IMG/VR virus record: IMGVR_UViG_3300042879_006196
Location: 283,393 to 347,392 of that record
DNA: 64,000 bases
Reading direction: 5' to 3' (one strand)
The notes beneath the pieces are model-generated. The model was given only the letters and a program-made list of their open reading frames with translations. It did not search any database and had not been told where the DNA came from. A program made the position numbers and the translations under genes. Shown one piece after another: positions 3,843 to 63,243 of this stretch; the stretch's first letter is position 1, and the number at the start of each line of letters is the position of its first letter.

Positions 3843-3882
3843 TCATGCATATTATACATAAACTTCGATGTACAATAAAATA

Positions 3883-4557
3883 ATGATTGTAATTTGCACT
3901 CATAAAAGTCCAGATATTTTAGAAAGATTTTTATCTTCAATCAAAAACCATCAAACTGAAAATCATAAAATTTTGATTGTAGAAACATCTGATAGCCAAG
4001 ATTCTAAAGTTTTATCTGAAAAGTATCAATGCTTATTTTCAAATACAAATTTGAAATATGAAATTGGCGCTTATGTGCATGCAATTAATTTATATCCTGA
4101 TGAAGATGAATATTTTTTATTTCAAGACTCATTAGAAATAGTCAATGATAATTGGGAAGATAATTTCAGGAAATTGTCTCAAGGAGAAAAGCTTGTCACA
4201 TTGTGTGGATATTTTTTAAAAGATGATCCATGCCCTGGGTGCGGAGTTGAAGAATTTGAGTCGTTATTTAATTGTAAGTTTCCAACCGAAGAAGGCTATG
4301 CAGTGATGACGAATAGCTTTTATATTACACAATCTGCAAAACAAAAACTTAAAAATTTTGGTATTGATAGGTTATTTGCTCATGAAAAAAACGACACTTA
4401 TAAAACAGAAAGAATTTTAGGAGCAATGGCACACTATACTTGTGGTATAGCAGATTTATCAGAACTTTTAGGAAATTATATTTGGCAAGTAGATCAGTTT
4501 TTGCCTGGTTTTGGTTTTACAAAATTTATTTTAAAACATATCAGAAAAAGACAATGA
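3883..4557 (+). CDS. Glycosyltransferase-like protein
   Basis: GT2-like N-terminus, YEIGA and FLFQDS motifs. Start moved to the ATG 11 nt after TGTACA. Confidence 0.55.
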   Translation: MIVICTHKSPDILERFLSSIKNHQTENHKILIVETSDSQDSKVLSEKYQCLFSNTNLKYEIGAYVHAINLYPDEDEYFLFQDSLEIVNDNWEDNFRKLSQGEKLVTLCGYFLKDDPCPGCGVEEFESLFNCKFPTEEGYAVMTNSFYITQSAKQKLKNFGIDRLFAHEKNDTYKTERILGAMAHYTCGIADLSELLGNYIWQVDQFLPGFGFTKFILKHIRKRQ

Positions 4558-5693
4558 AAAATATAATCACAAGAAAAAATTGTTTAATTGATCAAAATGA
4601 AAATTTAGAAAATCTTCATGTATTTAAGAATGTTCCTGTCTTCATGGGTTGCGTAGACACTTGTCCAGAAGATGACCTTAAACATGACATGATTTGGCAA
4701 ATTGACAAAACTACAGGCTTTATACAATTGAAAGAATTAATTCCACTTGACATTCTGTATCCAGAAGCTCACAATGCAGGAGCTATAGGCAAAATATGGT
4801 CTGAACATCATCGCGCTTTTGCTAATTTTATCAGAAAAACAAATCCAAACCAAGTTTTGGAAATTGGTGGATCTCATGGAATTTTATATGAGAAATATTG
4901 TTCTGAAAAAACAATACCTTGGACAATTATAGATTTGAACCCTATTCCGATAGATAATTGTAAAGCTGTTTTCAAAAAAGATATTTTTGATGAAAATTTC
5001 GAATATGATGAAGATTTTGATTGTTTAATTCATAGTCATTTTTATGAACACATTTATGAACCAATGGCAATCATGAAAAAAATGGCATCTTTGATTAAAA
5101 AAGATAAAAAAATGATTTTTTCAGTACCAAACATGCAAAAAATGCTAGAAAAAAAATATAGTAATTGTTTAAATTTTGAACACACTTTCTTTTTGTCAGA
5201 ACCTTACACCGAATATTTATTATCATTATTTAATTTGAAAATATTAGAAAAAGAATATTTTTTAGAAGATCATAGCATTTTTTATTGCGTACAGCATGAT
5301 GAAAACTATGATATAATAGAATTGCCTAATGATTTGTATACTCACAATAAGAATGTTTTTGAAAGTTATGTTAACTATTACCAATCACTCATAATTGATA
5401 TAAATGAAAAAATTAAAAATTGTGGTCCAGAAAGCATATTTTTATTCGGTGCACATATTTTTTCACAAAACTTAATAATGTTTGGTCTCGATGTTTCAAA
5501 GATTCGCTGTATTATAGATAACGATGTAGCAAAGCAAGGCAAGAGGTTATATGGCACTCCTTTTGAAGTTTGCTCTCCAAATATTTTAAAAGATATTGAG
5601 AAACCTATAATAGTTTTGAAGGCTGGAGTATATAACGAAGAAATTAAAAACCAAATAAATGATCTTAACTCTGAAACACTTTTTTATGAATGA
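4554..5693 (+). CDS. Class I SAM-dependent (sugar C-) methyltransferase
   Basis: VLEIGGSHG motif I, HFYEHI, FEHTFF, C-terminal FGAH...KQGKRLYGT domain; ATGA overlap with upstream gene. Confidence 0.8.
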   Translation: MKNIITRKNCLIDQNENLENLHVFKNVPVFMGCVDTCPEDDLKHDMIWQIDKTTGFIQLKELIPLDILYPEAHNAGAIGKIWSEHHRAFANFIRKTNPNQVLEIGGSHGILYEKYCSEKTIPWTIIDLNPIPIDNCKAVFKKDIFDENFEYDEDFDCLIHSHFYEHIYEPMAIMKKMASLIKKDKKMIFSVPNMQKMLEKKYSNCLNFEHTFFLSEPYTEYLLSLFNLKILEKEYFLEDHSIFYCVQHDENYDIIELPNDLYTHNKNVFESYVNYYQSLIIDINEKIKNCGPESIFLFGAHIFSQNLIMFGLDVSKIRCIIDNDVAKQGKRLYGTPFEVCSPNILKDIEKPIIVLKAGVYNEEIKNQINDLNSETLFYE

Positions 5694-6395
5694 TTAGACT
5701 CTACCAAATTGATCTTCATATCTTGTTATGTCATCTTCAGAGAATTTCTCTCCAGTTTGAATTTCAATAAAAATCAAATCTGTGTCTCCAGTGTTAACTA
5801 CTCTATGTTTTTCATTTTTTTTGACCTGACACACAGATCCTTTTTCAATTGGATGTTGATTATCTTCAAGAACAAAGATGCCATTCCCCTCAATAATTAA
5901 CCATAACTCATCACGATGCTGATGAGATTGTAAACTTGATGCTTTTCCTGGCAACACTTTTATTTCTTTCACGTGATATTTTTTATTATAAGCTAGAGTG
6001 GAAAAATTACCCCAAGGTCTTTCTTCACAAGGCTTGATTATTTTTTCAATTTCATCTTCAGTGATTCCATTTCTATTGGGAGTAAAACTGAAGGCTGTTT
6101 TCATGTTTGAGTTGGGCTTAAGATCATTAACAACAATTCTTTCACCTCTTCCGCAACCCATTACTAATTCATCATAAAATATATTTAACTTTCTTAATTG
6201 ATCTTCGGTTTGTTTTCTTGTTGAATTTCTTCTACCTGTCGTTAATACAATTTTAGCCCCGTTTTTTTCAATAGTATCTAAAAACTGCCTTGTCATCGTA
6301 ATCATTGATAAATTCTGGTCTGAAAGCTGTGCTCTAAGAGAACCATAATGCACCAATAGCACCCCATCTATGTCAAGAAAGTAAGTTTGTGTCAT
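5694..6395 (-). CDS. HAD-like domain fused to mannose-6-phosphate isomerase type II cupin
   Basis: FLDIDGVL, TTGR; ERPWG, SLQSHQHRDELW, EDDITRYEDQFGR. Confidence 0.8.
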   Translation of the reverse strand: MTQTYFLDIDGVLLVHYGSLRAQLSDQNLSMITMTRQFLDTIEKNGAKIVLTTGRRNSTRKQTEDQLRKLNIFYDELVMGCGRGERIVVNDLKPNSNMKTAFSFTPNRNGITEDEIEKIIKPCEERPWGNFSTLAYNKKYHVKEIKVLPGKASSLQSHQHRDELWLIIEGNGIFVLEDNQHPIEKGSVCQVKKNEKHRVVNTGDTDLIFIEIQTGEKFSEDDITRYEDQFGRV

Positions 6396-6417
6396 ATAAT
6401 TGTTGTACAACTAATAG

Positions 6418-7825: not shown

Positions 7826-7827
7826 AT

Positions 7828-9164: not shown

Positions 9165-9184
9165 TTACATATTGTACAATTTAC

Positions 9185-11878: not shown

Positions 11879-11905
11879 TAAATTATTATACTGTAAAATA
11901 CATTC

Positions 11906-15078: not shown

Positions 15079-15413
15079 CAAACCTTTACCATTTAAATAC
15101 AAAAAATTTTAGTACTCATTGTTTTGCTCATACTCCTGAGGAAGCTTTAGAGCACATTAAAGAAAATTGTAATTTTAGACCATGTTATTCATATGTAATC
15201 AAATTGGTAGAAGACGATACACTAAATGAAGATGGTGTTAGTTTTTTGAGAGAAAAGAATTTTATTGGTATACCAAAAGTAAAATTCTTTCTACTTAATG
15301 GCTCGGAAGCACATTGGTATGATCATTTTCACAATCAGAAAAAAACTCACTCTTTGTGGTGGTCTGAAAAAGTTCCTGGTTCAGAAAATCTTTGGAAGAA
15401 AGAAACCGTATAA
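15075..15413 (+). CDS. Hypothetical protein
   Basis: ATGA overlap. Confidence 0.55.
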   Translation: MTNLYHLNTKNFSTHCFAHTPEEALEHIKENCNFRPCYSYVIKLVEDDTLNEDGVSFLREKNFIGIPKVKFFLLNGSEAHWYDHFHNQKKTHSLWWSEKVPGSENLWKKETV

Positions 15414-19055: not shown

Positions 19056-19104
19056 AATCTTATTTTAAAAGAAATTTAATCAAAAACCTACCGTATATAT
19101 AATA

Positions 19105-23132: not shown

Positions 23133-23219
23133 TAATTTATATACGAAAAAAGAATTGTCATTTTTTATTAGAAATAGAAACTATACGATAAATTTATCGT
23201 CTAAAAAATAAGGTCAAAA

Positions 23220-26269: not shown

Positions 26270-26319
26270 ACACTATTTATACACCAGGAAAATATTGATG
26301 ATAAGTTTAAATTAATAAA

Positions 26320-27262: not shown

Positions 27263-27284
27263 GATGTAATTGTACAATCATAAC

Positions 27285-28104: not shown

Positions 28105-29064
28105 ATGATTGAAGCCGTTGATGTAATTTTTGGTGCTTCTTGGGGAGACGAAGGTAAAGGGAAAATCTCCTCAAGAATTGCCAAAAACTATGATTATGTT
28201 TGTAGGTTTAATGGTGGCTCAAATGCTGGTCATACATTTTATGTCAATGACAAAAAAGTAATCACTCATGTCATCCCATCAGGAATTGCATTTAATATAC
28301 CATCAATCATTGGACCAAATTGTGTAGTTTGCATTGAAGAATTCTTTGCAGAGCTATCATATTTAGAGCATTTAGGCTTTAATCCTAAGCTAGTGAAGAT
28401 AAGTCCAAAAGCACATATTGTCACGCCTCATCATAAAGAACAAGATGCTAATTATTATTCAAAATTAATAGGTACCACTTCTAAAGGCATTGGTTTGTGT
28501 TATGCTGACAAGGCGCTTAGAACAGGTGTAAGAGCAGATACTGTTATGCCAAAGGAGTATCTCTGGGATGAAAAACTTGATGGTCATGTTCTTTGTGAGG
28601 GCGCACAATCGTTCTGGTTAGATATTAATCAGGGTTCATATCCTTATGTTACATCTTCAGAGTGTTTGCCATATGCTTCTTGTTCGTTGGGATTTTCTCC
28701 CAAAAAAATTCGTGACATTATAGCAGTAGCAAAAATGTATGATACACGATCTGGAGTGGATCCTTATTTTGATTTAGACGATGAAGAGACACAGTTGGTG
28801 GCTAAATTAGGAAATGAGTACGGAACCACCACAGGAAGAGCAAGACAGGTAAAATGGTTAAATCTTGATAAGTTGTCTTATGCTATTGAGAAAGCTGGCG
28901 CAAATATATTATATATGAACAAAGGCGATATTTTAGAAGAAGCAAAAATCTTTAAATTATATCATAATTCAGAATTATTGTCTTTCAGCGATATAGAAGA
29001 AATGAAAGCTTTTATACTTGAAAAAGTCAAAGAAGTTCAGATTGTGTGGGATTTTCAAGCTTAA
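28105..29064 (+). CDS. purA: Adenylosuccinate synthetase (short form)
   Basis: WGDEGKGK, GGSNAGHT, GTTSKGIG, EGAQ, YPYVTSS, EYGTTTGR. Confidence 0.92.
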   Translation: MIEAVDVIFGASWGDEGKGKISSRIAKNYDYVCRFNGGSNAGHTFYVNDKKVITHVIPSGIAFNIPSIIGPNCVVCIEEFFAELSYLEHLGFNPKLVKISPKAHIVTPHHKEQDANYYSKLIGTTSKGIGLCYADKALRTGVRADTVMPKEYLWDEKLDGHVLCEGAQSFWLDINQGSYPYVTSSECLPYASCSLGFSPKKIRDIIAVAKMYDTRSGVDPYFDLDDEETQLVAKLGNEYGTTTGRARQVKWLNLDKLSYAIEKAGANILYMNKGDILEEAKIFKLYHNSELLSFSDIEEMKAFILEKVKEVQIVWDFQA

Positions 29065-29082
29065 AATCCGTATATTAAATGT

Positions 29083-29919
29083 ATGGACATTAACGAACAA
29101 CTTTTTGAAATTAAAAAGCCCTATCTTAAAACTATCAATTGTCTCGACAAAGGTTTTGTCAGATTGGTGGATTGGATGGGTTCTGATCAAAGAATTGTTC
29201 AATCAGCTCGCGTGTCCTATGGCGATGGAACAAAAACTGTTCGTGAAGATAAAGGGTTAATTGATTATCTTATGCGACACGCACACACTTCGCCTTTTGA
29301 GCAAGTGAATTTCACTTTCCATGCTAAGATGCCAATCTTTGTGGCAAGGCAGATTGTCAGACACAGGACTGCCAAGTTAAATGAGATTTCAGGAAGATAT
29401 TCAATACTCAAGGACGAGTTTTATGAGCCCGATGTTTCTAGAATGGTAAAACAATCTAAAGACAACAAACAGGGCTCTTCTCAAGAATTACTTGAAGATG
29501 CTGAAAGCTTTCTGCAATCATTTAAGGATGAGCAATTTGAAATGTATGATAATTATGAAGAATACATTCAAGGTGGAATGGCAAAAGAAATGGCTCGTAT
29601 AAATCTTCCTTTGTCAATTTATACAGAGTGGTATTGGACTATTGATTTACACAATCTGTTTCATTTCTTAAAACTTAGAATGGATTCTCACGCTCAATAT
29701 GAAGTGAGAGTGTATGCAGACGCTAAATACAACCTGATAAAAGATATTGTGCCATTTGCTTGCGAATCATTTGAGCAACATGTGATCAATGGCAAAAAGT
29801 TTTCAAAAGATGAATTAGACATAATGAAAGAATTGATTCAGCACGAAGACATTAAAAGGTTAGCTGATCAAAGAAATTGGAAAGAATCTAAGGTAAATGA
29901 ATTCCTTAAAAAGATATAA
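29083..29919 (+). CDS. thyX: FAD-dependent thymidylate synthase
   Basis: HTSPFE, RHRTAKLNEISGRY, HAQYEVR. Confidence 0.95.
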   Translation: MDINEQLFEIKKPYLKTINCLDKGFVRLVDWMGSDQRIVQSARVSYGDGTKTVREDKGLIDYLMRHAHTSPFEQVNFTFHAKMPIFVARQIVRHRTAKLNEISGRYSILKDEFYEPDVSRMVKQSKDNKQGSSQELLEDAESFLQSFKDEQFEMYDNYEEYIQGGMAKEMARINLPLSIYTEWYWTIDLHNLFHFLKLRMDSHAQYEVRVYADAKYNLIKDIVPFACESFEQHVINGKKFSKDELDIMKELIQHEDIKRLADQRNWKESKVNEFLKKI

Positions 29920-33702: not shown

Positions 33703-35009
33703 ATTGCAGTAATTAGAAAATATTCTACTATTTTTCTAAAACATGTAGGTGATAGCAAATATTAAACTGTAAAAGAACTATATGTTGAAAGCATATAAGT
33801 TTTTGATAAAACCTGCGAAAGAGCAAAGTGAGATGTTTGAAAAACATTTTGGCGCTGCTAGGTTTGTCTATAACTGGGGCTTAGAACAAAAAACAAAATC
33901 TTATCAAGAAGGAAAGAAAACATTGACTTTTCTTGGATTAGGACCAGAACTTGTTAAACTTAAAAAAGAAAACATCTGGATGAAAGAAGTTAATAGCCAA
34001 TCACTATTGGCTTCTCTAAAGAATTTAGACAATGCCTACACTAGATTCTTTCGAGAAAAGAAAGGATTTCCTAAATTTAAATCAAAATACAATCCAAAAC
34101 AATCCTTCCAATGCCCTCAACATTGTACTGTAGATTTTGAAAAAGGATTGCTAAATATCCCTAAAGTTAAAAATATCAAAACTGTATTCCACAGACAATT
34201 TGAAGGAGATATCAAAACTGTAACGATTTCTAAAGTGCCTTCTGGAAAATATTATGTTTCTATCCTTGTGGAAGATGGAAAGTCTTTACAAATTAAACCC
34301 AAACTTGACAGAAACGATGCAATAGGTATTGACATGGGATTGAAAGATTTTGTAGTTACTTCAGATGGAGATAAGATTGCTAATCCGAAATATCTCAGAA
34401 AATCCGAAGAACGACTTGCAAGAAGACAAAGAAAATTAAGTGTAAAAAAGAAAGGGAGCAATAATAGAAATAAACAACGTAAAAAAGTAGCAAAGCTACA
34501 TAAAAAAATAGCTAATCAAAGAAAAGACTTTCTGCATAAAGTATCTCATCAAATAGTTCACAAGAATCACGGAACGATTTGTGTTGAAGACTTGTGTGTT
34601 AAAGGGATGGTCAAAAATAGAAAATTAGCTAAATCAATATCTGATGCAGGATGGGGAATGTTCTATAATTTTCTGAAATACAAATCAGAATGGCATGGAA
34701 AGAATTTCCTTGATATTGGAAGATTTGAACCATCGAGCAAGATGTGTTCAGTCTGCGGGAATATCAAATCAGATTTGACATTATCTGATAGAGAATGGAT
34801 ATGTTCTAAATGTGAAACAAAACACGATAGAGATATCAATGCTTCAATTAATATTCGGAACATGGCATTCACTAATCAGAATTTGGTAAGATGTATAGGA
34901 CTGGAACAGCCCGAATCAACGCCTGTGGAGAAGAAAGCTCTGGTTAGAAATAATGAAACTATCTTCTGCGAAGCAGGAAGCCTCACCCCTTGTGGGTGAG
35001 GTAGTTCAC
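33668..35009 (+). mobile_element. TnpB-only IS200/IS605 (IS1341-type) element 1
   Basis: Left-end hairpin CCCCA..TGGGG; right-end hairpin CCTCACCC..GGGTGAGG followed by TAGTTCAC; ends shared with element 2. Confidence 0.85.
33782..34999 (+). CDS. tnpB: RNA-guided endonuclease TnpB
   Basis: GIDMG, VEDL, CSVC..CSKC, DRDINAS; RuvC triad intact. Confidence 0.95.
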   Translation: MLKAYKFLIKPAKEQSEMFEKHFGAARFVYNWGLEQKTKSYQEGKKTLTFLGLGPELVKLKKENIWMKEVNSQSLLASLKNLDNAYTRFFREKKGFPKFKSKYNPKQSFQCPQHCTVDFEKGLLNIPKVKNIKTVFHRQFEGDIKTVTISKVPSGKYYVSILVEDGKSLQIKPKLDRNDAIGIDMGLKDFVVTSDGDKIANPKYLRKSEERLARRQRKLSVKKKGSNNRNKQRKKVAKLHKKIANQRKDFLHKVSHQIVHKNHGTICVEDLCVKGMVKNRKLAKSISDAGWGMFYNFLKYKSEWHGKNFLDIGRFEPSSKMCSVCGNIKSDLTLSDREWICSKCETKHDRDINASINIRNMAFTNQNLVRCIGLEQPESTPVEKKALVRNNETIFCEAGSLTPCG

Positions 35010-35033
35010 TAATTAATTTTCGTATACATTATT

Positions 35034-35709: not shown

Positions 35710-36408
35710 ATGAAAAATATTCTATCTACATTATCAGATCATGAGTTGGTGGCTATTTACCAATCCAATTCAAATGAAACATACCTGGAAACACTTATTT
35801 CTAGATACGAAAAAATGCTTCGCAAGCTGTCTCATGCGCACACCTTGAAGCATCCAAATACAAATTTAGAAGATAACTTACAAAATGCCAAACATGGGGC
35901 GATTATTGCTTTCAACAGATTCAATACACAATCTTCAACAGCATTATCTACATTTTTACATACAACGGTGTATTATCATTTGCTAACATGTAGTGAAAAT
36001 GAATCATTTGTAAATTGCCCCAGCAATTTAAGAGAAGTGAAATCATATTGCGCTGGTAAATATGATTCAGATTTAAACAAAAAAAATAAATTCGAAGAAA
36101 AATATCGTTTATTCAATGAAAAAGATATTGAAGAATTTAAAAAAACTAATATTGTTTTGTCTAATCCAATTTGTGTCACTGAAAAACTACCAGACTTAAC
36201 TGTTTTCGATGAAAATTCTACAATTGATGAGATTCAAGTCAAATTATTTATTGAAACACTACCCGAAGATGATAAACAGATTGTGTGTATGTTAATGGAA
36301 GGCTATTCTATTTCAAAAATTTCAAAAATTCTTTCATCATCGCATCAAAAAATCTCAGATAAACAAATTAAAAAGAAATTGCAATCAATCCAAACATTAT
36401 TCGTATAA
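35710..36408 (+). CDS. Sigma-70 family phage sigma factor
   Basis: Region 2-like (LISRYEKML...EDNLQ...AFNRFN...STF) and region 4-like HTH. Confidence 0.7.
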   Translation: MKNILSTLSDHELVAIYQSNSNETYLETLISRYEKMLRKLSHAHTLKHPNTNLEDNLQNAKHGAIIAFNRFNTQSSTALSTFLHTTVYYHLLTCSENESFVNCPSNLREVKSYCAGKYDSDLNKKNKFEEKYRLFNEKDIEEFKKTNIVLSNPICVTEKLPDLTVFDENSTIDEIQVKLFIETLPEDDKQIVCMLMEGYSISKISKILSSSHQKISDKQIKKKLQSIQTLFV

Positions 36409-36415
36409 TACTATT

Positions 36416-36946: not shown

Positions 36947-37007
36947 TTTTCCAGGTTTAACAATTCTTAAATATAATCTTTTGTGTATTTACACATAAAA
37001 GATAATT

Positions 37008-37595
37008 ATGAAAAAAAATAACGATAATATAAGTGGAATGAATGATACCACAAATAGAGAAAAATTCGAAAAACTTTACAAGCAATCCCGTAGCAAACTT
37101 TACGGGATTGCTTTGTCTGTTGCAAGGGATGCAGATTTAGCAAATGATGTGTTGCAATTAGCCTATCTTAAAGCTTGGCGTAATTTTGATGAATATGATC
37201 AAAACAAAAAGTTTTTAAATTGGATGACAACAATTGTTAGAAATGCTGGCATTGATCAAACAAGACAAAAGAAAAAACACAATCTTGCATTTTCAATTGA
37301 TAGTTTGACTAATCCCACTGATGATAACAAATATCAAGAAATGTATATCGAAGATAAATCTTCTGATATAATGCAAAATTATGAAAGAAAAGAATTAATG
37401 CAAGCAATACAAAAAGAAATCTCTAAAATGCCTGAAGAGCTCAAGCTGGTTTTTATACCATTTGTCAAAGGTTTAACTTATGAAGAAATTTCTCAAGAAA
37501 CAAATGTAACCCTTGCTACAGTAAGAGCTAGAGTTCACCGAGCAAAACAAATTTTAAGAAACAATGAAAATCTTGAAAACTTAGCAAGTTTTTAA
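37008..37595 (+). CDS. ECF sigma factor
   Basis: DVLQ.AYLKAW, WMTTIVRN..ID, YEEIS...TVRARVHRAK. Confidence 0.88.
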   Translation: MKKNNDNISGMNDTTNREKFEKLYKQSRSKLYGIALSVARDADLANDVLQLAYLKAWRNFDEYDQNKKFLNWMTTIVRNAGIDQTRQKKKHNLAFSIDSLTNPTDDNKYQEMYIEDKSSDIMQNYERKELMQAIQKEISKMPEELKLVFIPFVKGLTYEEISQETNVTLATVRARVHRAKQILRNNENLENLASF

Positions 37596-37619
37596 CGTAT
37601 AATAAAGTAGGTAATAGAA

Positions 37620-38063
37620 ATGAAGAAAATTCTAACAATTATTCCAGCTCTCGCCGTTTTAGCTTCAGTCGCTCCTGCACAGGAAAAGATTGGGCTTCGA
37701 CCAATTAAGCCACAAGTAAAGTCGCAATCAATGGCTACTTCCGTTTCAGATGGTAGTTTGTCTTTCTTGTATCTTAGGGATGGCTTGGATACAAGCTACA
37801 CAGCTGTCTCCTACCCATTGTTCAACGTAAGTGGTCTTGGAAACAGGGTTCAAATCGTTGCACTTGGTGCATTTGACAGCAATTTCACAAAGACTAACAT
37901 GTATCTCGGTACAGGTGTGTCTGTGAGCGTTCTTCGTAATTCTGGTTGGGAAGTTAAAGCATACGCTGGTTATAAAGGCTTCAACCTTGGACAAAACTTT
38001 AATGCCGCTCAAGGCTCAGAAGGAGTAGTTCTTGGTCTTGGTCTGACCATTCCTGTGCGATAA
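37620..38063 (+). CDS. Exported beta-rich protein, possible outer-membrane barrel
   Basis: Signal peptide APA|Q; alternating beta-strands. Confidence 0.55.
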   Translation: MKKILTIIPALAVLASVAPAQEKIGLRPIKPQVKSQSMATSVSDGSLSFLYLRDGLDTSYTAVSYPLFNVSGLGNRVQIVALGAFDSNFTKTNMYLGTGVSVSVLRNSGWEVKAYAGYKGFNLGQNFNAAQGSEGVVLGLGLTIPVR

Positions 38064-38087
38064 TCCATTCGGCATTTCGTTTCTCCT

Positions 38088-38115
38088 AGTCCTCATAGCA
38101 ATGTGAGGACTTTTT
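38088..38115 (+). terminator. Intrinsic terminator
   Basis: AGTCCTCA..TGAGGACT followed by T run. Confidence 0.75.
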
Positions 38116-38141
38116 CTTTCAAACTTTGTATATATTAATAT

Positions 38142-38525
38142 GGGGCGCCCAGGCATTCGACAGAAGAGTATGGGTGTGCGTTGCATGTAGTGGGTGATTC
38201 TCCGGCCACTTCAAAAGAGAATCAAAAAATAAATGGCAAAAATGCTAAAAAGAATCGCAGAAATGGCTTTGGCTCTGCCCAAGCTGGCTTTGCAATGGTA
38301 GCCTAAGTGCTTCCTGGGGATACGTACAACCAAGCTAGTAGGGTGTCTATCTCTTAGAATAAAGTCTAGCTAAAAAACATCTATGATCGAATGATGTAAA
38401 AGCGATATGCAGATTGTGTGGATTTGTTATTTGTTCCTAACAATTTAAGAAAAAACAATAAACTAAACATGTAGTAACGTATATGACAGCTATTTTGGAA
38501 AGGGGTTCGACTCCCCTGCGCTCCA
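38142..38525 (+). ncRNA. ssrA: tmRNA (CCA not encoded)
   Basis: GGGGCGC/GCGCTCCA acceptor stem with G3:U70, TTCGAC near the 5' end, T-arm AGGGGTTCGACTCCCCT; tag ORF 38235-38306 GKNAKKNRRNGFGSAQAGFAMVA*. Confidence 0.92.
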
Positions 38526-42031: not shown

Positions 42032-43153
42032 ATGAAAGAAATTTTTTCAAAAATATCTGAACAAATAATGCATTCGCCAAATTTAAAACATTTAATTTTA
42101 GCCATTGGATTGAAATATAATACTTCAAATTACATTAAAGTTTCAAATTATATTAAAAACAATAATATTAATGATAGTCATTTCCCTCACCCAAAAGATA
42201 AATTAAAATATATTTCGAATGAAGTGTTTATAGAAGCATATCACAAATCAAAATCTCTTGGTGAACTTTTGTCTCAACTTGGATTAAATCACTCTTACTA
42301 TAAAAAATTGCATAAAAAAATTTTTGATTTGAAATTAGATGTTTCAAAATTTCAATTTGTTAAATGGTCTGAAGCTGAAATTGAGTGTCTCAAAGAAAAT
42401 TATCCTACTAAAACAGAAGATGAATTAAAAATTTTATTTCCTAACAGAACAATTGAAGGACTACAAAGATATGCTTGTTATTATAAAATTAAAAAAACAA
42501 AAAATAATGTTTCTTCTAATTTACGTATTCTTTTAAATAATAATTTAGAATCTTTATATTGGATAGGTTTTATTATGGCTGATGGTACAATTGATTTAAA
42601 ACGTGGCAGGTTGAAAATTTCTGTTGACAAAAAAGATGCAGAACATTTATTCAAGTTTAAATCCTATATTGAATGCGAAAATTCTGTGAAAAATTATTGT
42701 CAATCAAAAAACGCTTTTGGCATTAGTGATTTAAGTGAAATTTCTTTATACAATAAAAATGTTATTGAGAAAATCTCTGACAAATTTAATCTTAAACCAA
42801 AAAAAACATATAATCCTCCTGATTGTAAAATTTTTGAACAATTCGAAATTAATCAAATTTTGTCTTTGATTATAGGCTACATAGATGGAGATGGATGTAT
42901 TTATAAAAATAAAAATGGAAACATTGACATTAAAATAGTTAGTCACGAAAGTTGGATTTTTGTTTTTGAGTTTTGGCAAAAATGTATTGAAAAAAAATTC
43001 AAAACAAAAATTCCTTTTGCGAAAATAAATAGTTCAAAATTGTCACAAATAAATTTTAGCAAAAAACAAATTATTTTTGAATTAAAAAAGTTTGTTGAAG
43101 AAAATAATTTACCTGTACTCGAAAGAAAATGGAATAAAATTTCGTATAGTTAA
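42032..43153 (+). CDS. Free-standing double-motif LAGLIDADG homing endonuclease
   Basis: WIGFIMADG and IIGYIDGDG; C-terminal LERKW. Confidence 0.85.
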   Translation: MKEIFSKISEQIMHSPNLKHLILAIGLKYNTSNYIKVSNYIKNNNINDSHFPHPKDKLKYISNEVFIEAYHKSKSLGELLSQLGLNHSYYKKLHKKIFDLKLDVSKFQFVKWSEAEIECLKENYPTKTEDELKILFPNRTIEGLQRYACYYKIKKTKNNVSSNLRILLNNNLESLYWIGFIMADGTIDLKRGRLKISVDKKDAEHLFKFKSYIECENSVKNYCQSKNAFGISDLSEISLYNKNVIEKISDKFNLKPKKTYNPPDCKIFEQFEINQILSLIIGYIDGDGCIYKNKNGNIDIKIVSHESWIFVFEFWQKCIEKKFKTKIPFAKINSSKLSQINFSKKQIIFELKKFVEENNLPVLERKWNKISYS

Positions 43154-43155: not shown

Positions 43156-43677
43156 ATGAAAAATAATTTAAAAGCAATAGTTATGGACCTGGATGGAGTG
43201 GTTGTAAATAGCTCATCAAGGTTTAAAAGATTGAATCTTGATGCCTTTATTCGCAGAGATGCAAAAGCTTGGATAAAATCAGTGGAATGGTACAATGCTG
43301 ATTGCAGAGGCGATGAAGTGATTGATTTGGGTGTTGATTTACTTGAAATGCTATGCACATTTTACAAACCAGATTGTGTGTTTTTTATCACAGCTAGAGG
43401 GCATGGCGGATATAAACCCACTTTGCAATGGCTTAAAGATGAAGGGATTTGGAAAGAAGATTGTGTTTTGATTATGCAACCAGAAGATTTTGATAATTAC
43501 CACTTCTACACACAATCTGACCATGCTTCATATAAGAAAAAAGAAGCTCTGAAAATTATGGAAAATTATGAGATTGTGTATGCTGTGGACGATAGCGAAG
43601 ACAATGTTCAGGCATACAGAGATTTAAAAATTCCCACGCTGAAGTTTTGTGTGCCTATCGGAAGAGTGCTGGTTTAA
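43156..43677 (+). CDS. HAD phosphatase (PNKP 3'-phosphatase-like)
   Basis: DLDG, TAR, K, VDD. Confidence 0.75.
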   Translation: MKNNLKAIVMDLDGVVVNSSSRFKRLNLDAFIRRDAKAWIKSVEWYNADCRGDEVIDLGVDLLEMLCTFYKPDCVFFITARGHGGYKPTLQWLKDEGIWKEDCVLIMQPEDFDNYHFYTQSDHASYKKKEALKIMENYEIVYAVDDSEDNVQAYRDLKIPTLKFCVPIGRVLV

Positions 43678-46632: not shown

Positions 46633-46697
46633 TCTTGCTTTGTTTTCCAGGTTTAACATTTTTCTAGTATAATTAACCAGGAAGTCAGAATTAAATA

Positions 46698-50231: not shown

Positions 50232-50280
50232 TATTTATATTTTACATCTAAAACACAATCTCACCTTTTTTAAATAAAAA

Positions 50281-52190: not shown

Positions 52191-52247
52191 ATAAATAATA
52201 TACAAAAAAATAATAAAAAAAGTTGCTTTTTTTTCATACTTAAATCA

Positions 52248-52274: not shown

Positions 52275-52333
52275 ATTATCAATAGTCTTATGTTATTTTT
52301 TTCCAGGTTTAACATTTTTGATTTATAATAGTC

Positions 52334-53622: not shown

Positions 53623-53639
53623 TTTTGTATAAATAGTTT

Positions 53640-54462: not shown

Positions 54463-54522
54463 CACAATCTGAATTATTTATTACTTAAAGACCGTATATG
54501 GAAAGAGGAATGAGAACAAATC

Positions 54523-57955: not shown

Positions 57956-57989
57956 TATGAAATTGCCAATAGGTTTTGATGAGCCAATT

Positions 57990-59315
57990 GTGAACTACCT
58001 CACCCATAAAGGGAGAGGCTTCCTGTTTCATAGTCGTTAGCAACCTAACAATTCCACAGGCGTTGATTCGGCTTGTTCCAAGCCTATAAATCTCATTAAA
58101 TTTTGACGATTGAATGCCATTTCTTTAATGTTGATAGCAGCATTAATATCACGATCATGTGTAACTCCACAAGGACATTGCCATACACGATCTTTTAATG
58201 TTAATTCTCGATTGACATAGCCACAGATAGAACAAGTTTTTGAACTAGGTTCAAATCTTCCAATATCTAATAACCATTTCCCATTCCATTCACATTTATA
58301 TTCTAAAAATGAACGAAACATTCCCCATCCTACATCGGATATGGATTTTGCTAATCTATGATTTCTGATCATTCCTTGTGTGTTTAAATCTTCTATACAT
58401 AACACATCAATTTGGTTCTCATTAACGAGTTCATGTGAGATTTTATGAAGGAAATCTTTTCTTTGATTAGAAACTTTTTCATGTAACTTAGCGAGTTTTA
58501 CTCGCTGTTTGTTTTGATTATTACTACCTTTATTCATTCTTGAAAATCGACGTTGCATTCGTTTTAATTTTTCTTCTGACTTTTTAAGGAAACGTGGATT
58601 ATTAATTTTGTCACCTTCCGACGTAATAACAAAATGTGTCAATCCAAGATCAACACCTATAGCTCTGTCTTTGTTGAGTTCTGGTTTAGCAGGAATATTT
58701 TCATCAATTTCAACTAATATAGAAGCATAATATTTTCCAGTAGATGATTTACTAATTGTAATTGATTTAACTTTTCCTTCAAAATGACGATGCAAAACAG
58801 CTTTAATATTTTTAGCTTTAGGAATTGAAATTGTATTTAATTCAAAATCCACAACACACGATTGAGGATTCATAAATGAAGACTTACTGAATTTCTTGCT
58901 TTTAAATTTTGGAAATCCTTTCTTTTCTTTAAAGAATCTACTAAATGCAGAATCCAAATTAGCAGTTACAGCTTGTAACGCTTGTGAATTAACATTTGTC
59001 AGCCAATGGTGTTCTTCTTTAAGTTCTTTAAGTTTTGCATCCATTTCAAATTTAGTTAATTTCTGTTTTCCATTCACATACATTTCTGTTTTCAGTTCAA
59101 GAAAATAATTATATACAAATCTCGCACAACCAAAAGAACTTTCAATTAATTGAATTTGCTCTTGATTAGGTTTGATTCTATACTTATATGCCTTAAACAT
59201 ATAAATAATTTCTGCTTATTTTCTAGTCACACCTATTTTTCGACTAGAAATTTTATAATATTTTTTAATAATTCAGCAATTCATCCCCACTGACGAGCAG
59301 ATGGGGCTTTCTTGC
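57990..59315 (-). mobile_element. TnpB-only IS200/IS605 element 2
   Basis: Same left- and right-end hairpins and GTAGTTCAC end as element 1. Confidence 0.85.
58037..59200 (-). CDS. tnpB: RNA-guided endonuclease TnpB
   Basis: GVDLG, IEDL, CSIC..CPC, DRDINAA. Confidence 0.95.
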   Translation of the reverse strand: MFKAYKYRIKPNQEQIQLIESSFGCARFVYNYFLELKTEMYVNGKQKLTKFEMDAKLKELKEEHHWLTNVNSQALQAVTANLDSAFSRFFKEKKGFPKFKSKKFSKSSFMNPQSCVVDFELNTISIPKAKNIKAVLHRHFEGKVKSITISKSSTGKYYASILVEIDENIPAKPELNKDRAIGVDLGLTHFVITSEGDKINNPRFLKKSEEKLKRMQRRFSRMNKGSNNQNKQRVKLAKLHEKVSNQRKDFLHKISHELVNENQIDVLCIEDLNTQGMIRNHRLAKSISDVGWGMFRSFLEYKCEWNGKWLLDIGRFEPSSKTCSICGYVNRELTLKDRVWQCPCGVTHDRDINAAINIKEMAFNRQNLMRFIGLEQAESTPVELLGC

Positions 59316-59535
59316 AGGTATATTGTAAATGATGATGGCTCTGTTGAGTACGATTGGATGTTTGACAAAAATGCATTTTCGTTGACCATATATCCAGATG
59401 GCAAAGTAGGATATGCTTACTTGATTGGAAATATTTCTGATTGCGGTGTTTCTTATTTGGAAGATGGCAATTTGCCTGATTTTATTACAAACAAGATTCA
59501 AGAACTTTCCACACAATCTGAGCGTATAAAAATTA

Positions 59536-59706: not shown

Positions 59707-60160
59707 TAAACTCGAAACCAAAACAATACTTTGTGCCGCGTTTCCTGGCACTGGCAAAACATTTATCTGTAATAATTCAAAACTAAAAGCAATTGAAGTG
59801 GAATTTTGGCAGTATGAAAGCCAAAAACAATACATTCAAGATATTAAAGCATTGATAGGTGAAGTAGATTTTGTATTCCTATCCACTGAAATAGATGGTT
59901 TACAGCTTTTGCATAATGAAGGTCTTGAAATTTTCCTTGTTTATCCTCAAAAGAATTTGAGGAATGAATATTTAGACAGATATATTGAAAGAGATAACCC
60001 ATATGATTTCATAGGCACGATGATGAAATTTTGGGACACTACTATTGAAAAACTTCAAGAGCAAAAGTATTGTAAACACTTCGTTTTAGGAAAAAATCAA
60101 TATTTGAGCGATATTCTTCATTTACTCAGTAAACCCTCCACACAATCTGAGCGTATATAA
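59699..60160 (+). CDS. P-loop-like conserved phage protein
   Basis: AAFPGTGKT; LVYP...EYLDRY..R; start uncertain. Confidence 0.6.
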   Translation: MISKLETKTILCAAFPGTGKTFICNNSKLKAIEVEFWQYESQKQYIQDIKALIGEVDFVFLSTEIDGLQLLHNEGLEIFLVYPQKNLRNEYLDRYIERDNPYDFIGTMMKFWDTTIEKLQEQKYCKHFVLGKNQYLSDILHLLSKPSTQSERI

Positions 60161-60164
60161 GACT

Positions 60165-60500: not shown

Positions 60501-60539
60501 TTTTCGAACCTTCCACACAATCTGAGCGTATAAAATAAT

Positions 60540-60794: not shown

Positions 60795-60887
60795 TGTTAA
60801 CAATTTCGTGGCTAGGAGGTGAAAATATAATTTACCACAAGCTCTGTAGTTTGCAACTTTCCACACAATCTGAGCGTATAAAATAAT

Positions 60888-61388: not shown

Positions 61389-61399
61389 TTGATTTCAAA

Positions 61400-61474
61400 A
61401 ATTTCGTGGCGAGGAGGTGATTGTGCCACGTTTATGCCAGGGTGAAAAATCCCTGGCTTTTTTTTTGCAACTTT
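61400..61474 (+). terminator. SD-in-loop hairpin plus intrinsic terminator, copy 1
   Basis: CGTGGC-gAGGAGGTGATtgt-GCCACG, then GCCAGGG..CCCTGGC-T9. Confidence 0.8.
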
Positions 61475-61499
61475 TTAAACAATCTAATCGTATAGAATC

Positions 61500-61817: not shown

Positions 61818-61818
61818 G

Positions 61819-62709
61819 ATGTTTTCAGTCATTCTTTTTCTCGCAATTATCGCTCTTGTGGTGGGTTTTGTTATGCCTTCTAAAGACGACGATGATCTTT
61901 CTGCGATTGCAAAGTGGCTCAAATCAATCTCTCTTGTCTTAATCATCTTGAGCGTATTTGGTAGTGCTTATTTCTCAGTACCTGCGGGGTACAGAGGTGT
62001 GCTGTTGAATTTCGGAGCAGTTAAGGGCGTTATGGGCGAGGGTGTGCAATTTGTCATTCCTTTTGTTCAGAAAGTAGAACTCATGGAAGTGAGAACGCAA
62101 AAAGAAGAAGCTAAAGCCGCCGCCGCGTCTAAGGACTTGCAAAATGTTAGCACCACCGTTGCTATTAACTATCACCTTAATCCTTTGCAAGTGGGTAATC
62201 TCTACAAAAACGTGGGTCTTGACTTTGCAAGTAGAATTATTGACCCTGCTACACAGGAAACCGTTAAAGCTGTAGTTGCCAATTACACTGCCGAAGAATT
62301 AATTAGGTTGAGAAGCAAAATTAAAAATGAAATTGATACTATGCTTACTGAGCGATTAAAAGCTTATGACATTGTTGTTGAAAATAACGGTGTGTCTTTG
62401 ACAAATTTCGAGTTTTCTCAAGATTTCAACAGAGCAATTGAACAAAAGCAGGTGGCACAACAATCGGCTGAAAAATCGAAGTATGAACTTCAAAAGGCTG
62501 AAATTGATGCCAAAACAGCTATTGCCAGAGCAGAGGGTGAAGCTAGATCAAACAAAATCAAGGCTGAAGCTCTCAACCAAAATGGTGGATCTAAAGTTCT
62601 TGCCAGAGAATGGATTGAGAAGTGGGATGGACATTTGCCACAAGTCTCTGCGAATGGTAACATGATGTTCAACATTGATAGTTTAATGAAGGAAGCTAAT
62701 TCCAAGTAA
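61819..62709 (+). CDS. SPFH/prohibitin (band 7) protein
   Basis: VPAGYRGV..FG, ASKDLQ, AIEQKQ, IEKWDG.LP. Confidence 0.9.
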   Translation: MFSVILFLAIIALVVGFVMPSKDDDDLSAIAKWLKSISLVLIILSVFGSAYFSVPAGYRGVLLNFGAVKGVMGEGVQFVIPFVQKVELMEVRTQKEEAKAAAASKDLQNVSTTVAINYHLNPLQVGNLYKNVGLDFASRIIDPATQETVKAVVANYTAEELIRLRSKIKNEIDTMLTERLKAYDIVVENNGVSLTNFEFSQDFNRAIEQKQVAQQSAEKSKYELQKAEIDAKTAIARAEGEARSNKIKAEALNQNGGSKVLAREWIEKWDGHLPQVSANGNMMFNIDSLMKEANSK

Positions 62710-62717
62710 GCTATAAC

Positions 62718-62794
62718 AATTTCGTGGCTAGGAGGTGATTGTGCCACGTTTGTGCCAGGGTGAAAAATCCCTGGCTTTTTTTTTTGCAACTTTT
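62718..62794 (+). terminator. SD-in-loop hairpin plus intrinsic terminator, copy 2
   Basis: Near-identical to the 61400 copy. Confidence 0.8.
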
Positions 62795-62820
62795 CCTCTC
62801 TTTGATTCGTATATATACGT

Positions 62821-63243
62821 ATGTTCACTGCAATAATGGCGAGCATACTGTTATGTAGCCAAAAATCGGTAGGACAAGGCAAGCCGCCTGTTCAAAAAGC
62901 CAAAACAAGCAATGTTTCAAAACTTGCTAATTCAAACAAACAATACAAAGCAAACTTTTTAGTTACTGCTTACTCTACTCATCCTAGCGAAAATGGTGGT
63001 TATACTATCACTTCTACAGGAAAAAAATTAGGTGAAGGTATTGTTGCTGTAGACCCAAAAGTTATCCCGATGGGAAGTAAAATTCACATACCAGGTTACG
63101 GATGGGGTGTTGCCGCTGATGTAGGTGGTGCTATTAAAGGTAGACATATTGATGTGTGTTTATCCTCGCGTGGTAGTGTAGGAAGATGGGGGCGTAAAAA
63201 GCTTAATATCACGGTTATACCGAAAACCAAAACTACCAAATAA
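62821..63243 (+). CDS. 3D-domain (MltA-like) protein
   Basis: VTAY, VAVDP.VIP.GS, ADVGGAIKG.HID. Confidence 0.9.
   Translation: MFTAIMASILLCSQKSVGQGKPPVQKAKTSNVSKLANSNKQYKANFLVTAYSTHPSENGGYTITSTGKKLGEGIVAVDPKVIPMGSKIHIPGYGWGVAADVGGAIKGRHIDVCLSSRGSVGRWGRKKLNITVIPKTKTTK

What the first reader, a model, noticed from the sequence alone, without database searches (positions are those of the whole stretch)
3850..62823. Class 1 promoter motif (C/T)GTA(T/C)A directly upstream of ATG implies widespread leaderless mRNA
Seen: YGTAYA with mostly 11-12 nt between the G and the start codon and no SD, e.g. before 3883, 15420, 19105, 29083, 35034, 36416, 43156, 53640, 59536, 60165, 60540, 60888, 62821, and on the minus strand 23132, 26269, 52190. 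It also lies 13 nt before the tmRNA 5' end. A -10-like box about 6 nt before AUG places the transcription start on the start codon. The motif also corrects several starts in the ORF track.
Basis: partly seen in the sequence, partly recalled or inferred. Interest (0 to 1): 0.6.

Follow-up and report, generated by a model that had tools for sequence, protein, structure and literature searches.

The report
Leaderless-type promoters in a huge phage
In this 347-kb lake-water phage, roughly a quarter of the genes, plus its tmRNA and several tRNAs, sit directly behind a -10-type promoter box with no room for a ribosome-binding leader, so they are most likely expressed as leaderless mRNAs; this strategy is known from Deinococcus-Thermus, Actinobacteria and Thermus phage phiYS40.

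Summary
All 16 cited sites carry (C/T)GTA(T/C)A with the G 12 or 13 nt before an ATG. In the 347-kb genome this coupling occurs 52 times against 3.3 expected (window: 25 against 1.2). It recurs in two related phage contigs and is kept at 33 of 44 orthologous starts.

The window is the end of a huge phage from lake metagenomes. The phage has no RNA polymerase of its own. It encodes four sigma-like proteins, NusG, IF3, bS21, a tmRNA and 23 tRNAs.

- (G)AAC-N16/17-CGTATA is an ECF-type promoter. The phage ECF sigma is most similar to B. subtilis SigW.
- TGTA(T/C/A)AAT has its hexamer at -12..-7 from the ATG and is often palindromic and bidirectional.

A third, larger class was missed: TTTCCA-N18-TATAAT-N4-ATG, about 70 copies, three of them in the window.

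Genes behind these motifs lack Shine-Dalgarno sequences (0-4%, against 38% of other genes). Pfam profiles and DnaK confirm the start codons. The same boxes precede the tmRNA and tRNAs, and terminators lie about 35 nt upstream.

Transcription starts could not be mapped, because no usable RNA run exists. Leaderless expression is therefore strongly inferred but not shown.

The parts
3869..3874 (+). TGTACA box, G 13 nt before ATG 3883 (GT2-like gene 3883-4557)
   Evidence: Pfam GT2 profile position 2 aligns to residue 2
6404..6409 (.). Palindrome TTGTACAA serving ATG 6418 (+) and ATG 6395 (-). The two start codons are 23 bp apart.
   Evidence: 23 bp is a known symmetric bidirectional -10 configuration
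9173..9178 (.). Palindromic TGTACA between ATG 9185 (+) and ATG 9164 (-)
11892..11897 (+). TGTAAA variant, G 13 nt before ATG 11906
15407..15412 (+). CGTATA, G 12 nt before ATG 15420 (DUF7831 gene)
19092..19097 (+). CGTATA, G 12 nt before ATG 19105 (dNMP-kinase-like gene)
23140..23145 (-). CGTATA, G 12 nt before ATG 23132 (SLOG-like gene)
26278..26283 (-). TGTATA, G 13 nt before ATG 26269 (RmlC epimerase)
   Evidence: Pfam profile 5-167 aligns to residues 5-164
27271..27276 (.). Palindromic TGTACA between ATG 27285 (+) and ATG 27262 (-), 23 bp apart
29069..29074 (+). CGTATA, G 13 nt before ATG 29083 (ThyX)
33768..33773 (+). TGTAAA variant, G 13 nt before ATG 33782 (TnpB)
35021..35026 (+). CGTATA, G 12 nt before ATG 35034 (radical-SAM/4Fe-4S gene). 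A hairpin lies directly upstream.
35710..36408 (+). Divergent sigma-like gene
   Evidence: weak Sigma70_r2 and TIGR02937 hits, below the cut-off
36402..36407 (+). CGTATA, G 13 nt before ATG 36416 (NusG, 36416-36946)
   Evidence: TIGR00922 at 165 bits
36938..36977 (+). Class A promoter (TTTCCAGG TTTAACA-N9-TATAAT) with a 30-nt leader before the sigma gene
37008..37595 (+). Phage ECF-type sigma factor, the candidate reader of the GAAC-N16/17-CGTATA promoters
   Evidence: Pfam r2 + r4_2 + Sigma70_ECF; best PDB match is B. subtilis SigW 5wuq, E 1.5e-16; NCBIfam ECF superfamily at 80 bits
38127..38132 (+). TGTATA box, G 14 nt before the tmRNA 5' end. A hairpin and T-tract lie upstream.
38142..38525 (+). 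tmRNA gene
   Evidence: ARAGORN; Rfam RF00023 at 108 bits
41373..41378 (-). TGTATA, G 14 nt before ATG 41363
43143..43148 (+). CGTATA, G 12 nt before ATG 43156 (HAD phosphatase-like gene)
46644..46673 (+). Class A promoter TTTCCA-N18-TATAAT with a 24-nt AGGAAG-containing leader before ATG 46698
50241..50246 (-). TGTAAA variant, G 14 nt before ATG 50231
52199..52204 (-). TGTATA, G 13 nt before ATG 52190 (DnaK). The ORF-track TTG at 52205 lies inside the box.
52300..52329 (+). Class A promoter TTTCCA-N18-TATAAT, then 4 nt, then ATG 52334 (79-aa ORF)
53626..53631 (+). TGTATA, G 13 nt before ATG 53640
59523..59528 (+). gAAC-N18-CGTATA promoter, G 12 nt before ATG 59536 (56-aa ORF)
60152..60157 (+). 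aAAC-N18-CGTATA promoter before ATG 60165
60527..60532 (+). gAAC-N18-CGTATA promoter before ATG 60540. A related strain's contig diverges immediately after this box.
60875..60880 (+). cAAC-N18-CGTATA promoter before ATG 60888
61436..61466 (+). Intrinsic terminator (GCCAGGG..CCCTGGC + T9) directly upstream of the 61489 promoter
61489..61494 (+). GCAAC-N18-CGTATA promoter, G 13 nt before ATG 61503
62754..62785 (+). Intrinsic terminator plus T10. Only 35 nt separate its end from ATG 62821.
62808..62813 (+). GCAAC-N18-CGTATA promoter, G 12 nt before ATG 62821 (3D-domain gene 62821-63243, followed by the terminator at 63248-63265)

Best explanation
The motif is the -10 element of promoters of a huge lake-water phage. 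The phage has no RNA polymerase of its own and redirects the host enzyme. At least three promoter types are present.
(i) Early-type cassettes: hairpin, TTTCCA-N18-TATAAT, 4 nt, ATG. There are about 70, mostly at genome 1-70 kb. They are probably read by the host primary sigma.
(ii) (G)AAC-N16/17-CGTATA. These are probably read by the phage's SigW-like ECF sigma, whose own gene sits behind a type (i) promoter. That arrangement would form a cascade.
(iii) TGTA(T/C/A)AAT, with the hexamer at -12..-7 relative to the ATG. It is often a perfect palindrome that serves two divergent genes.

Because the -10 box ends 4-6 nt before the start codon, transcription must begin on the A of AUG or within about 4 nt of it. 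The mRNA then has no Shine-Dalgarno leader and would be translated by the leaderless route, in which a 70S ribosome or IF2 binds a 5'-terminal AUG. Operon-internal genes and most virion genes use ordinary GGAGG-type SD sites.

Shown here: the motif, its position, the absence of SD, the correctness of the start codons, its use before non-coding RNA genes, its conservation in relatives, and the presence of an ECF sigma.
Inferred: the exact transcription starts, which sigma reads which class, and leaderless translation.
For: - Positional coupling: p 6e-43 in the genome, and replicated in two related contigs.
- 33 of 44 orthologous starts keep the box while the flanking sequence diverges.
- SD is absent from motif genes (0-4%) and present in 38% of other genes.
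- Pfam profiles and DnaK fit the box-proximal ATG.
- In 19 of 34 window cases no upstream in-frame start exists.
- The same boxes lie 12-15 nt before the tmRNA, tRNA-Lys, tRNA-Met and the tRNA-Asp cluster.
- The CGTATA class has A at -20 in 21 of 29 sites and AAC 16-17 nt upstream in 10 of 29, plus a T-rich stretch. This matches the ECF 'AAC'/'CGT(A)' grammar (PMC5758882).
- Phage ECF sigma: best PDB hit is SigW.
- In the sigmaE open complex, the GTC element is G-11 T-10 C-9 (PMC6648896). That predicts a start 0-1 nt before the AUG for the CGTATA class.
- Terminators end 35 nt before ATG 62821 and ATG 61503.
- Class A: 46 of 48 N4 ATGs open at least 50 codons, against 16% of random ATGs. The few class A promoters with long leaders carry SD such as AAAGGAG.
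- No phage RNA polymerase was found.
- A Fimbriimonadaceae genome, the clade with the closest DnaK, shows the same G-TANNNT-N6-ATG/GTG peak. Two control genomes do not.
Against: - No transcription start data. The only 'RNA?' runs are DNA of relatives, and contigs cannot show 5' ends.
- In class A only 4 nt separate TATAAT from the ATG. That is 2 nt closer than the canonical geometry, so the A of AUG would be an unusually near start site.
- The -35-like element is present in only part of the CGTATA sites.
- Most YGTAYA copies (about 85%) are not at starts.
- The same boxes also precede SD-led leaders in some genes, for example genome 89349 and 257569.
- The host assignment rests on DnaK similarity (60-62%) and promoter grammar only. 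The phage GC content (34%) is far below that genome's (55%).
- The phage carries IF3. In E. coli, IF3 inhibits leaderless translation when in excess (PMC9031893).
Confidence: 0.75

Rival explanations
1. The boxes are promoters, but they are minor ones. Most expression of these genes comes from read-through or upstream promoters, so the dominant mRNAs are leadered and translated without SD by some other route.
For: Many motif sites lie inside or overlap the end of the upstream gene, with gaps of -56 to +8 nt. Polycistronic read-through is therefore possible. About 44-67% of non-motif genes per region also lack a clear SD.
Against: Terminators lie directly upstream of several sites. Divergent gene pairs are only 23 bp apart, which leaves no other promoter space. 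SD is more depleted than at random sites, which argues for a distinct initiation mode.
Confidence: 0.1
2. The motif is a translation signal, an AU-rich enhancer or alternative ribosome-binding site at -12, and not a transcription signal.
For: It has a fixed distance to the start codon and AU-rich content. It also occurs at gene junctions with no intergenic space.
Against: The same box at the same distance precedes the untranslated tmRNA and tRNA genes. It has bipartite -35/-10 architectures with 16-18 nt spacers and upstream terminators. It matches the ECF and sigma70 -10 consensus.
Confidence: 0.04
3. The palindromic TTGTACAA subset is an operator for a dimeric phage regulator between divergent genes, and the real promoters lie elsewhere.
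For: It is a perfect 8-10 bp palindrome centred between divergent ATGs.
Against: Non-palindromic TGTATAAT and TGTAAAAT occur at the same offset. TGTATA and TGTACA interchange between orthologues. Canonical -12..-7 geometry puts both starts exactly on the two ATGs, and 23-bp separation is a known bidirectional promoter configuration. A box can also be both promoter and operator.
Confidence: 0.05
4. It is a compositional artefact of AT-rich sequence upstream of genes.
For: The genome is 34% GC, and TA-rich hexamers are common. A generic sigma70 scan is not enriched over shuffles.
Against: There is a sharp one-to-two-nucleotide offset peak with p < 1e-40. The G/C-containing positions (CG, G, C) are invariant. 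The pattern is conserved in relatives.
Confidence: 0.01

Closest known systems
-10 box adjacent to ORFs / leaderless genes of Deinococcus-Thermus and Actinobacteria (Zheng 2011, PMC3160421; de Groot 2014, PMC4007540; PMC12340547)
   Same: A TANNNT-type -10 element about 12 nt upstream of the start codon. No SD. SD-led genes coexist in the same genome. AUG and some GUG starts are used.
   Different: Here it is in a phage. Several promoter grammars are used (ECF-like CGTATA, TGTAnAAT, TATAAT-N4). The box is 1-2 nt closer to the ATG in two of the classes. It is also used before tRNA and tmRNA genes.
Thermus phage phiYS40 (middle/late leaderless mRNAs; host IF2 up, IF3 down)
   Same: A large phage without its own RNA polymerase in which most transcripts of some temporal classes lack leaders (review PMC3594737).
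   Different: No sequence relationship was detected. Here the putative early cassettes are also leaderless-type, and the virion genes are mostly SD-led. This phage encodes its own IF3 and bS21. The primary phiYS40 paper was not available to me.
ECF (group 4) sigma promoters, especially B. subtilis SigW (TGAAAC-N16-CGTATA)
   Same: AAC in the -35 region followed by a T-tract, a 16-17 nt gap, and a CGTA(TA) -10 element. The cognate small sigma has only domains 2 and 4.
   Different: The sigma is phage-encoded, with no anti-sigma recognised. Only about a third of the CGTATA sites have an exact AAC. The promoters abut start codons. Recognition by this sigma is untested.
Symmetric bidirectional bacterial promoters (Warman et al., bioRxiv 10.1101/2020.01.31.928960)
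   Same: -10 elements overlap on opposite strands. The predicted divergent starts are 23 bp apart, one of the favoured symmetric spacings.
   Different: Here both predicted starts coincide with the start codons of divergent genes, giving two leaderless mRNAs from one 10-bp palindrome.
T4-type promoter-early stem-loop (PeSL) cassettes (from my own knowledge; not checked in the library)
   Same: Repeated terminator-hairpin plus early-promoter units flank small early ORFs. Gene content is exchanged at the promoter in a related strain.
   Different: The promoter sequence is different, and the ATG is fused 4 nt behind the -10 box.

Membership tests
Leaderless-gene promoter architecture (-10 box abutting ORF) | TANNNT-like -10 element starting about 12 nt upstream of the start codon, with a sharp positional peak | tested here: met
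   TGTAnAAT: hexamer at -12..-7. CGTATA: TATAnn at -11..-6. Class A: TATAAT at -10..-5. Offset peaks.
Leaderless-gene promoter architecture (-10 box abutting ORF) | No Shine-Dalgarno sequence before these genes, while other genes of the same genome have one | tested here: met
   0-4% against 38% (random sites 12%)
Leaderless-gene promoter architecture (-10 box abutting ORF) | The box-proximal ATG is the real start codon | tested here: met
   Pfam profile starts and the DnaK N-terminus. First possible start in 19 of 34 window cases. Orthologue alignments start at residue 1.
Leaderless-gene promoter architecture (-10 box abutting ORF) | Primary 5' end of the mRNA at or within a few nt of the start codon | not testable with these tools
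   No RNA run holds the phage, and contigs do not show 5' ends
ECF (group 4) sigma-dependent promoter | Conserved AAC in the -35 region | tested here: inconclusive
   Exact AAC 16-17 nt upstream in 10 of 29 sites. A at -20 in 21 of 29. (G/A)AA(A/C) in most sites.
ECF (group 4) sigma-dependent promoter | CGT-type -10 element and a 14-17 nt spacer | tested here: met
   CGTATA is invariant by selection; the gap is 16-17 nt. Grammar as described in PMC5758882.
ECF (group 4) sigma-dependent promoter | A cognate sigma with only domains sigma2 and sigma4 is available | tested here: met
   Window 37008-37595: r2 + r4_2 + ECF models; SigW is the best PDB hit
ECF (group 4) sigma-dependent promoter | Transcription depends on that sigma | not testable with these tools
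   Needs in vitro transcription or genetics
Sigma70-type bipartite promoter (class A) | -35-like and -10 hexamers separated by 17 +/- 1 nt | tested here: met
   TTTCCA (4 of 6) - N18 - TATAAT (6 of 6) in about 70 copies
Sigma70-type bipartite promoter (class A) | Start site 6-8 nt downstream of the -10 hexamer | tested here: inconclusive
   The ATG begins 5 nt after the hexamer. A canonical start would fall on the G of ATG or at +4, yet 46 of 48 of these ATGs open long ORFs. The geometry must be non-canonical or the leader 0-4 nt.
phiYS40-like phage leaderless programme | Leaderless transcripts confined to the middle/late classes, with the host IF2/IF3 balance shifted | not testable with these tools
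   No expression data. By genome region the abutting boxes are commonest in early-like and metabolic modules (28-29%) and rarest in the virion module (10%).

The most novel reading that the evidence does not exclude
The phage runs a translational as well as a transcriptional timetable. Early and middle genes are made as leaderless mRNAs from promoters fused to their start codons. The phage's own IF3 and bS21, both factors that favour canonical SD-dependent 30S initiation, then accumulate and shift host ribosomes toward the SD-led virion mRNAs while shutting off leaderless early messages. tRNA and tmRNA transcripts that start at or next to their mature 5' ends would be part of the same 'no leader' design.
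Probability: 0.15. Interest if true: 0.8.

Novelty: new member of a known kind. Interest (0 to 1): 0.55.

Why it matters
1. Gene calling. Standard callers that expect SD sites mis-place starts in such phages. Here the motif fixes at least six starts in one window and reveals short ORFs.
2. Host prediction. The phage's 'G-TANNNT-N6-ATG' grammar is shared with a Fimbriimonadaceae (Armatimonadota) genome, the clade with the closest DnaK. Promoter and initiation grammar may therefore be a usable host-prediction signal for uncultured huge phages.
3. Phage biology. It extends large-scale leaderless expression, so far best documented for one Thermus phage, to a 347-kb freshwater phage. It also links it to a phage ECF sigma, NusG, IF3 and bS21. 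That gives a concrete, testable system for how phages bias both transcription and translation initiation.

Tried and rejected
- Megablast and tblastn against the phage collection found nothing.
- The ECF sigma found no relatives in viral contigs. TerL did find relatives.
- No multisubunit or T7-type RNA polymerase was found. The T7-family control rang nowhere, so that negative is weak.
- Sequencing runs: 18 lake DNA runs hold the phage. The two 'RNA?' runs turned out to be DNA of 90-95% identical relatives. A small metatranscriptome had nothing.
- A generic sigma70 consensus scan is not enriched over shuffles, so it is useless here.
- phiKZ and AR9 giant phages were considered as analogues and rejected. 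They have their own RNA polymerases, different promoters and no leaderless transcripts.
- 'Moraphages' (freshwater jumbo phages with DnaK) were considered and rejected as the same lineage. They use PolB and a T4-like core and have predicted Bacteroidota hosts, whereas this phage has DnaE and a Mu-like portal.
- A Bacteroidota host is unlikely because many genes carry strong GGAGG-type SD sites.
- The phiYS40 primary paper was not held.
- Enrichment of 'box + SD leader' arrangements was not significant overall (11% against 8% at random). Only individual examples are convincing.
- No alternative genetic code was needed: code 11 gives 98% coverage by long ORFs.
- The large protein searches were not used.

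Full report
**What the window is.** The 64-kb window is the last part of a single 347,392-bp IMG/VR virus record. Its GC content is 33.6%. It reads well under the standard code: 98% is covered by ORFs of at least 100 aa. Most large ORFs have no Pfam family. Those that do are phage-like or auxiliary:
- a Mu-like portal, a TerL-like ATPase and DnaE-type Pol III alpha;
- DnaK, AdoHcy hydrolase and two TnpB genes;
- a PurZ-like PHROG hit.

The DNA occurs in 18 lake-water metagenome runs. No multisubunit or T7-type RNA polymerase was found. The genome does encode four sigma-like proteins, a bona fide NusG, a tmRNA, 23 tRNAs, an IF3 homologue and a bS21 homologue.

**Check of the observation.** All 16 cited sites have (c/t)GTA(T/C)A, then 7-8 nt, then ATG. 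The hexamer as a word is only modestly enriched: 123 copies against 85 expected. Its position is sharply non-random.
- CGTATA peaks with the G 12 nt before ATG. TGTATA and TGTACA peak at 13 nt.
- Counting only ATGs that open at least 40 codons, offsets 12+13 hold 52 sites in the genome against 3.3 expected (p 6e-43). In the window the count is 25 against 1.2.
- Allowing A at the fifth position (TGTAAA or CGTAAA) adds more sites.

**Independent replication.** TerL found four related viral contigs at 68-76% identity. In the two longest (G003, 166 kb; G002, 62 kb) the same offset peaks appear, with p values of 1e-14 and 1e-6. Of 44 orthologue pairs whose protein alignments begin at residue 1, 33 keep a box at the same distance, although the surrounding upstream sequence has diverged. 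TGTATA/TGTACA and C/T at the first position interchange between orthologues.

**The ATG behind the box is the start codon.**
- Pfam profiles begin within a few residues of it: DUF7831 (15420), NusG (36416), RmlC (26269-), GT2 (3883), dNMP kinase (19105), HAD (43156) and SLOG (23132-).
- DnaK from 52190 reads MAKEYILGIDLGTTNS.
- In 19 of 34 window cases there is no upstream in-frame start at all. Where there is one, it is usually the TTG inside TTGTAYA itself.

**It is a transcription signal, not a translation signal.**
- The same boxes lie 12-15 nt before the mature 5' ends of the tmRNA (38142), tRNA-Lys, tRNA-Met (with TTGAAC-N16-CGTATAAT) and the tRNA-Asp cluster.
- Intrinsic terminators end 35 nt before ATG 62821 and ATG 61503. 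That is just enough space for a promoter and leaves none for a leader. Gene 62821-63243 is followed by its own terminator.
- Divergent gene pairs have start codons only 23 bp apart, centred on ATTGTACAAT (6395/6418 and 27262/27285).

**There is more than one class.**
- *CGTATA class.* Aligned on the G, CGTATA sites carry an upstream (G/A)AA(C/A). There is an A at -20 in 21 of 29 sites, and an exact AAC with a 16-17 nt gap in 10 of 29, followed by T-rich positions. This is the ECF grammar: AAC in the -35 region, CGT in the -10 region, CGTA selective for SigW, and tGAAACnTTTt (PMC5758882).
- *The candidate sigma.* The sigma at window 37008-37595 has only regions 2 and 4 and matches ECF models. 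Its best solved relative is B. subtilis SigW (5wuq, E 1.5e-16). Its own gene sits behind a class A promoter with a 30-nt leader. That suggests a cascade from host sigma to phage ECF sigma to the CGTATA promoters.
- *Predicted start for the CGTATA class.* In the E. coli sigmaE open complex the GTC element is G-11, T-10, C-9 (PMC6648896). With the phage G 12 nt before the A of ATG, the predicted start is 0-1 nt before the AUG.
- *TGTA(T/C/A)AAT class.* These sites show no -35 signal. The hexamer lies at -12..-7 from the ATG, so canonical geometry puts the start on the A of AUG. In the palindromes this holds on both strands. A 23-bp separation is one of the symmetric bidirectional configurations described for bacteria.
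- *Class A, a larger class.* The genome holds about 70 near-identical cassettes: hairpin, TTTTTCCAGGTTTAACA-N9-TATAAT (= TTTCCA-N18-TATAAT), then AGAT and ATG. Of these, 48 have ATG exactly 4 nt after TATAAT, and 46 of those open at least 50 codons, against 16% for random ATGs. Three have GTG at that position, and others have a start 2-6 nt away. The few with long leaders include SD-bearing examples such as AAAGGAG. Three copies are in the window: 36938-36977, 46644-46673, and 52300-52329 before ATG 52334. In relative G002 these cassettes read ...CAGCGTATAATAGAT-ATG, so the classes grade into one another.

**Translation signals.** Duplex energy with the anti-SD is <= -4.5 kcal/mol for 0% of class A genes, 4% of YGTAYA genes, 38% of the other genes and 12% of random positions. 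Many virion and operon-internal genes have textbook sites, for example ataGGAGGTGaaacATG and aaaAGGAGaaaat..ATG. The host therefore uses SD, and the box-fused genes form a separate, SD-free group. About 109 of 469 crude gene calls (23%) have a box abutting their first ATG, and up to 149 candidate starts do so. By region the share is 28% (0-70 kb), 20% (70-125 kb), 10% (virion module) and 29% (265-347 kb). GTG is also somewhat enriched at the offset: 15 against about 4.

**Host clue.** The closest DnaK genes found are from Fimbriimonadaceae and other Armatimonadota MAGs, at 60-62% identity. In 400 kb of one such genome (GC 55%), TANNNT peaks exactly 12 nt before ATG/GTG. G precedes the hexamer in 53% of these sites against 19% of controls (p 2e-7). 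The pattern is therefore G-TANNNT-N6-start with the G at -13, as in the phage's TGTAnAAT class. SD sites are seen as well. Chloroflexota and Lancefieldella fragments show neither feature. This fits an Armatimonadota-like host with native leaderless expression. It is indirect evidence, and the 21-point GC difference argues for caution.

**What could not be done.** No RNA run holds the phage. The two runs labelled RNA-Seq are DNA of 90-95% identical relatives, kept only as contigs. Transcription starts are therefore inferred. The class A geometry needs a start closer to the -10 box than is usual for sigma70. Either the leader is 0-4 nt with non-canonical start selection, or something about this RNA polymerase/sigma pairing differs.

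**Comparison with what is known.**
- A -10 box next to the ORF as the signature of leaderless genes is established for Actinobacteria and Deinococcus-Thermus (PMC3160421; PMC4007540; PMC12340547).
- Thermus phage phiYS40 makes most middle/late mRNAs leaderless while host IF2 rises and IF3 falls (PMC3594737).
- phiKZ and AR9 giant phages have no leaderless transcripts.
- The present case is a new member of this kind. What stands out is a huge uncultured freshwater phage, several promoter grammars including an ECF-type one, bidirectional palindromes, and the same design before tRNA and tmRNA genes.
- The phage-encoded IF3 and bS21 are notable. Excess IF3 inhibits leaderless translation in E. coli (PMC9031893). 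They could serve a switch toward SD-led late mRNAs. This is speculation and is given as the novel case.

Noticed in passing
window, 52 sites (e.g. 19052, 43371-43579, 59511, 60140, 60515, 60863); genome-wide 336 sites: The word ACACAATCT(G) is hugely over-represented: 52 copies in the window against 1.06 expected, about 1 per kb genome-wide. It occurs in both orientations. 31% of copies lie in the 8% non-coding DNA, but 231 copies are inside ORFs. It often sits in promoter spacers. It is present in relatives G001-G003 and absent from G004. Function unknown; it could be a regulator or nucleoid-protein site, or a Chi/USS-like self marker.
   Followed up: partly
genome 1-70 kb (L001-L004); window 36938-36977, 46644-46673, 52300-52329: About 70 near-identical cassettes of hairpin (CCTCC-aaagg-GGAGG), TTTTTCCAGGTTTAACA-N9-TATAAT, AGAT and ATG, in front of small ORFs. 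This is an early-gene-like array resembling T4 promoter-early stem-loop cassettes.
   Followed up: yes
L001:2047-2559 (+) and genome 86284-86439 (-): The phage encodes an IF3 homologue (IF3_C, 86 bits). It is the second gene of a small operon whose first ORF is fused to a CGTATA box. The phage also encodes a ribosomal protein bS21 homologue (60 bits).
   Followed up: partly
window 35710-38525: Transcription/translation module: a divergent sigma-like gene, NusG, a SigW-like ECF sigma, a 147-aa ORF of unknown function, and the tmRNA. Two more sigma-like genes lie at genome 119943-120662 (SigH-like) and 122518-123072 (ECF superfamily, FliA-like region 4).
   Followed up: partly
genome 48946, 56829, 70505 (L003, L004): tRNA genes and clusters lie 12-15 nt behind CGTATAAT or TGTATAAT boxes. 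Primary transcripts would therefore start at, or 1-3 nt before, the mature tRNA 5' end. My crude ORF caller had called a spurious 51-aa ORF over tRNA-Met at 70504.
   Followed up: partly
window 60527-60532: A contig of a related strain (run X19) matches up to the CGTATA box and then continues with unrelated sequence, TAAGAC-ATG.... Gene cassettes seem to be exchanged at the promoter, and the new ATG is again box-proximal (G 11 nt before it).
   Followed up: no
window 62755-64000 and beyond: A DNA contig of run X1 (8,663 nt) runs about 7.4 kb past the window's and the record's end. The IMG/VR record (labelled 'provirus') is therefore trimmed or permuted, not the physical end of the genome.
   Followed up: no
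window 28105-29064 and 29083-29919: There is a PurZ-like gene (PHROG 2-aminooxy adenylosuccinate synthetase, 212 bits) next to ThyX. This raises the possibility of a modified-base (diaminopurine-type) genome.
   Followed up: no
L123-L142 (Fimbriimonadaceae MAG, G006:C1:1.0-1.4 Mb): This Armatimonadota genome shows a clear leaderless signature: G-TANNNT exactly 13/12 nt before ATG/GTG in about 10% of long ORFs, alongside SD-led genes. I did not find this described for the phylum in the papers read.
   Followed up: partly
window 33782-34999 (+) and 58037-59200 (-): Two full-length TnpB (OrfB_IS605 / Cas12f-like TNB) genes. The first is itself fused to a TGTAAA box.
   Followed up: no
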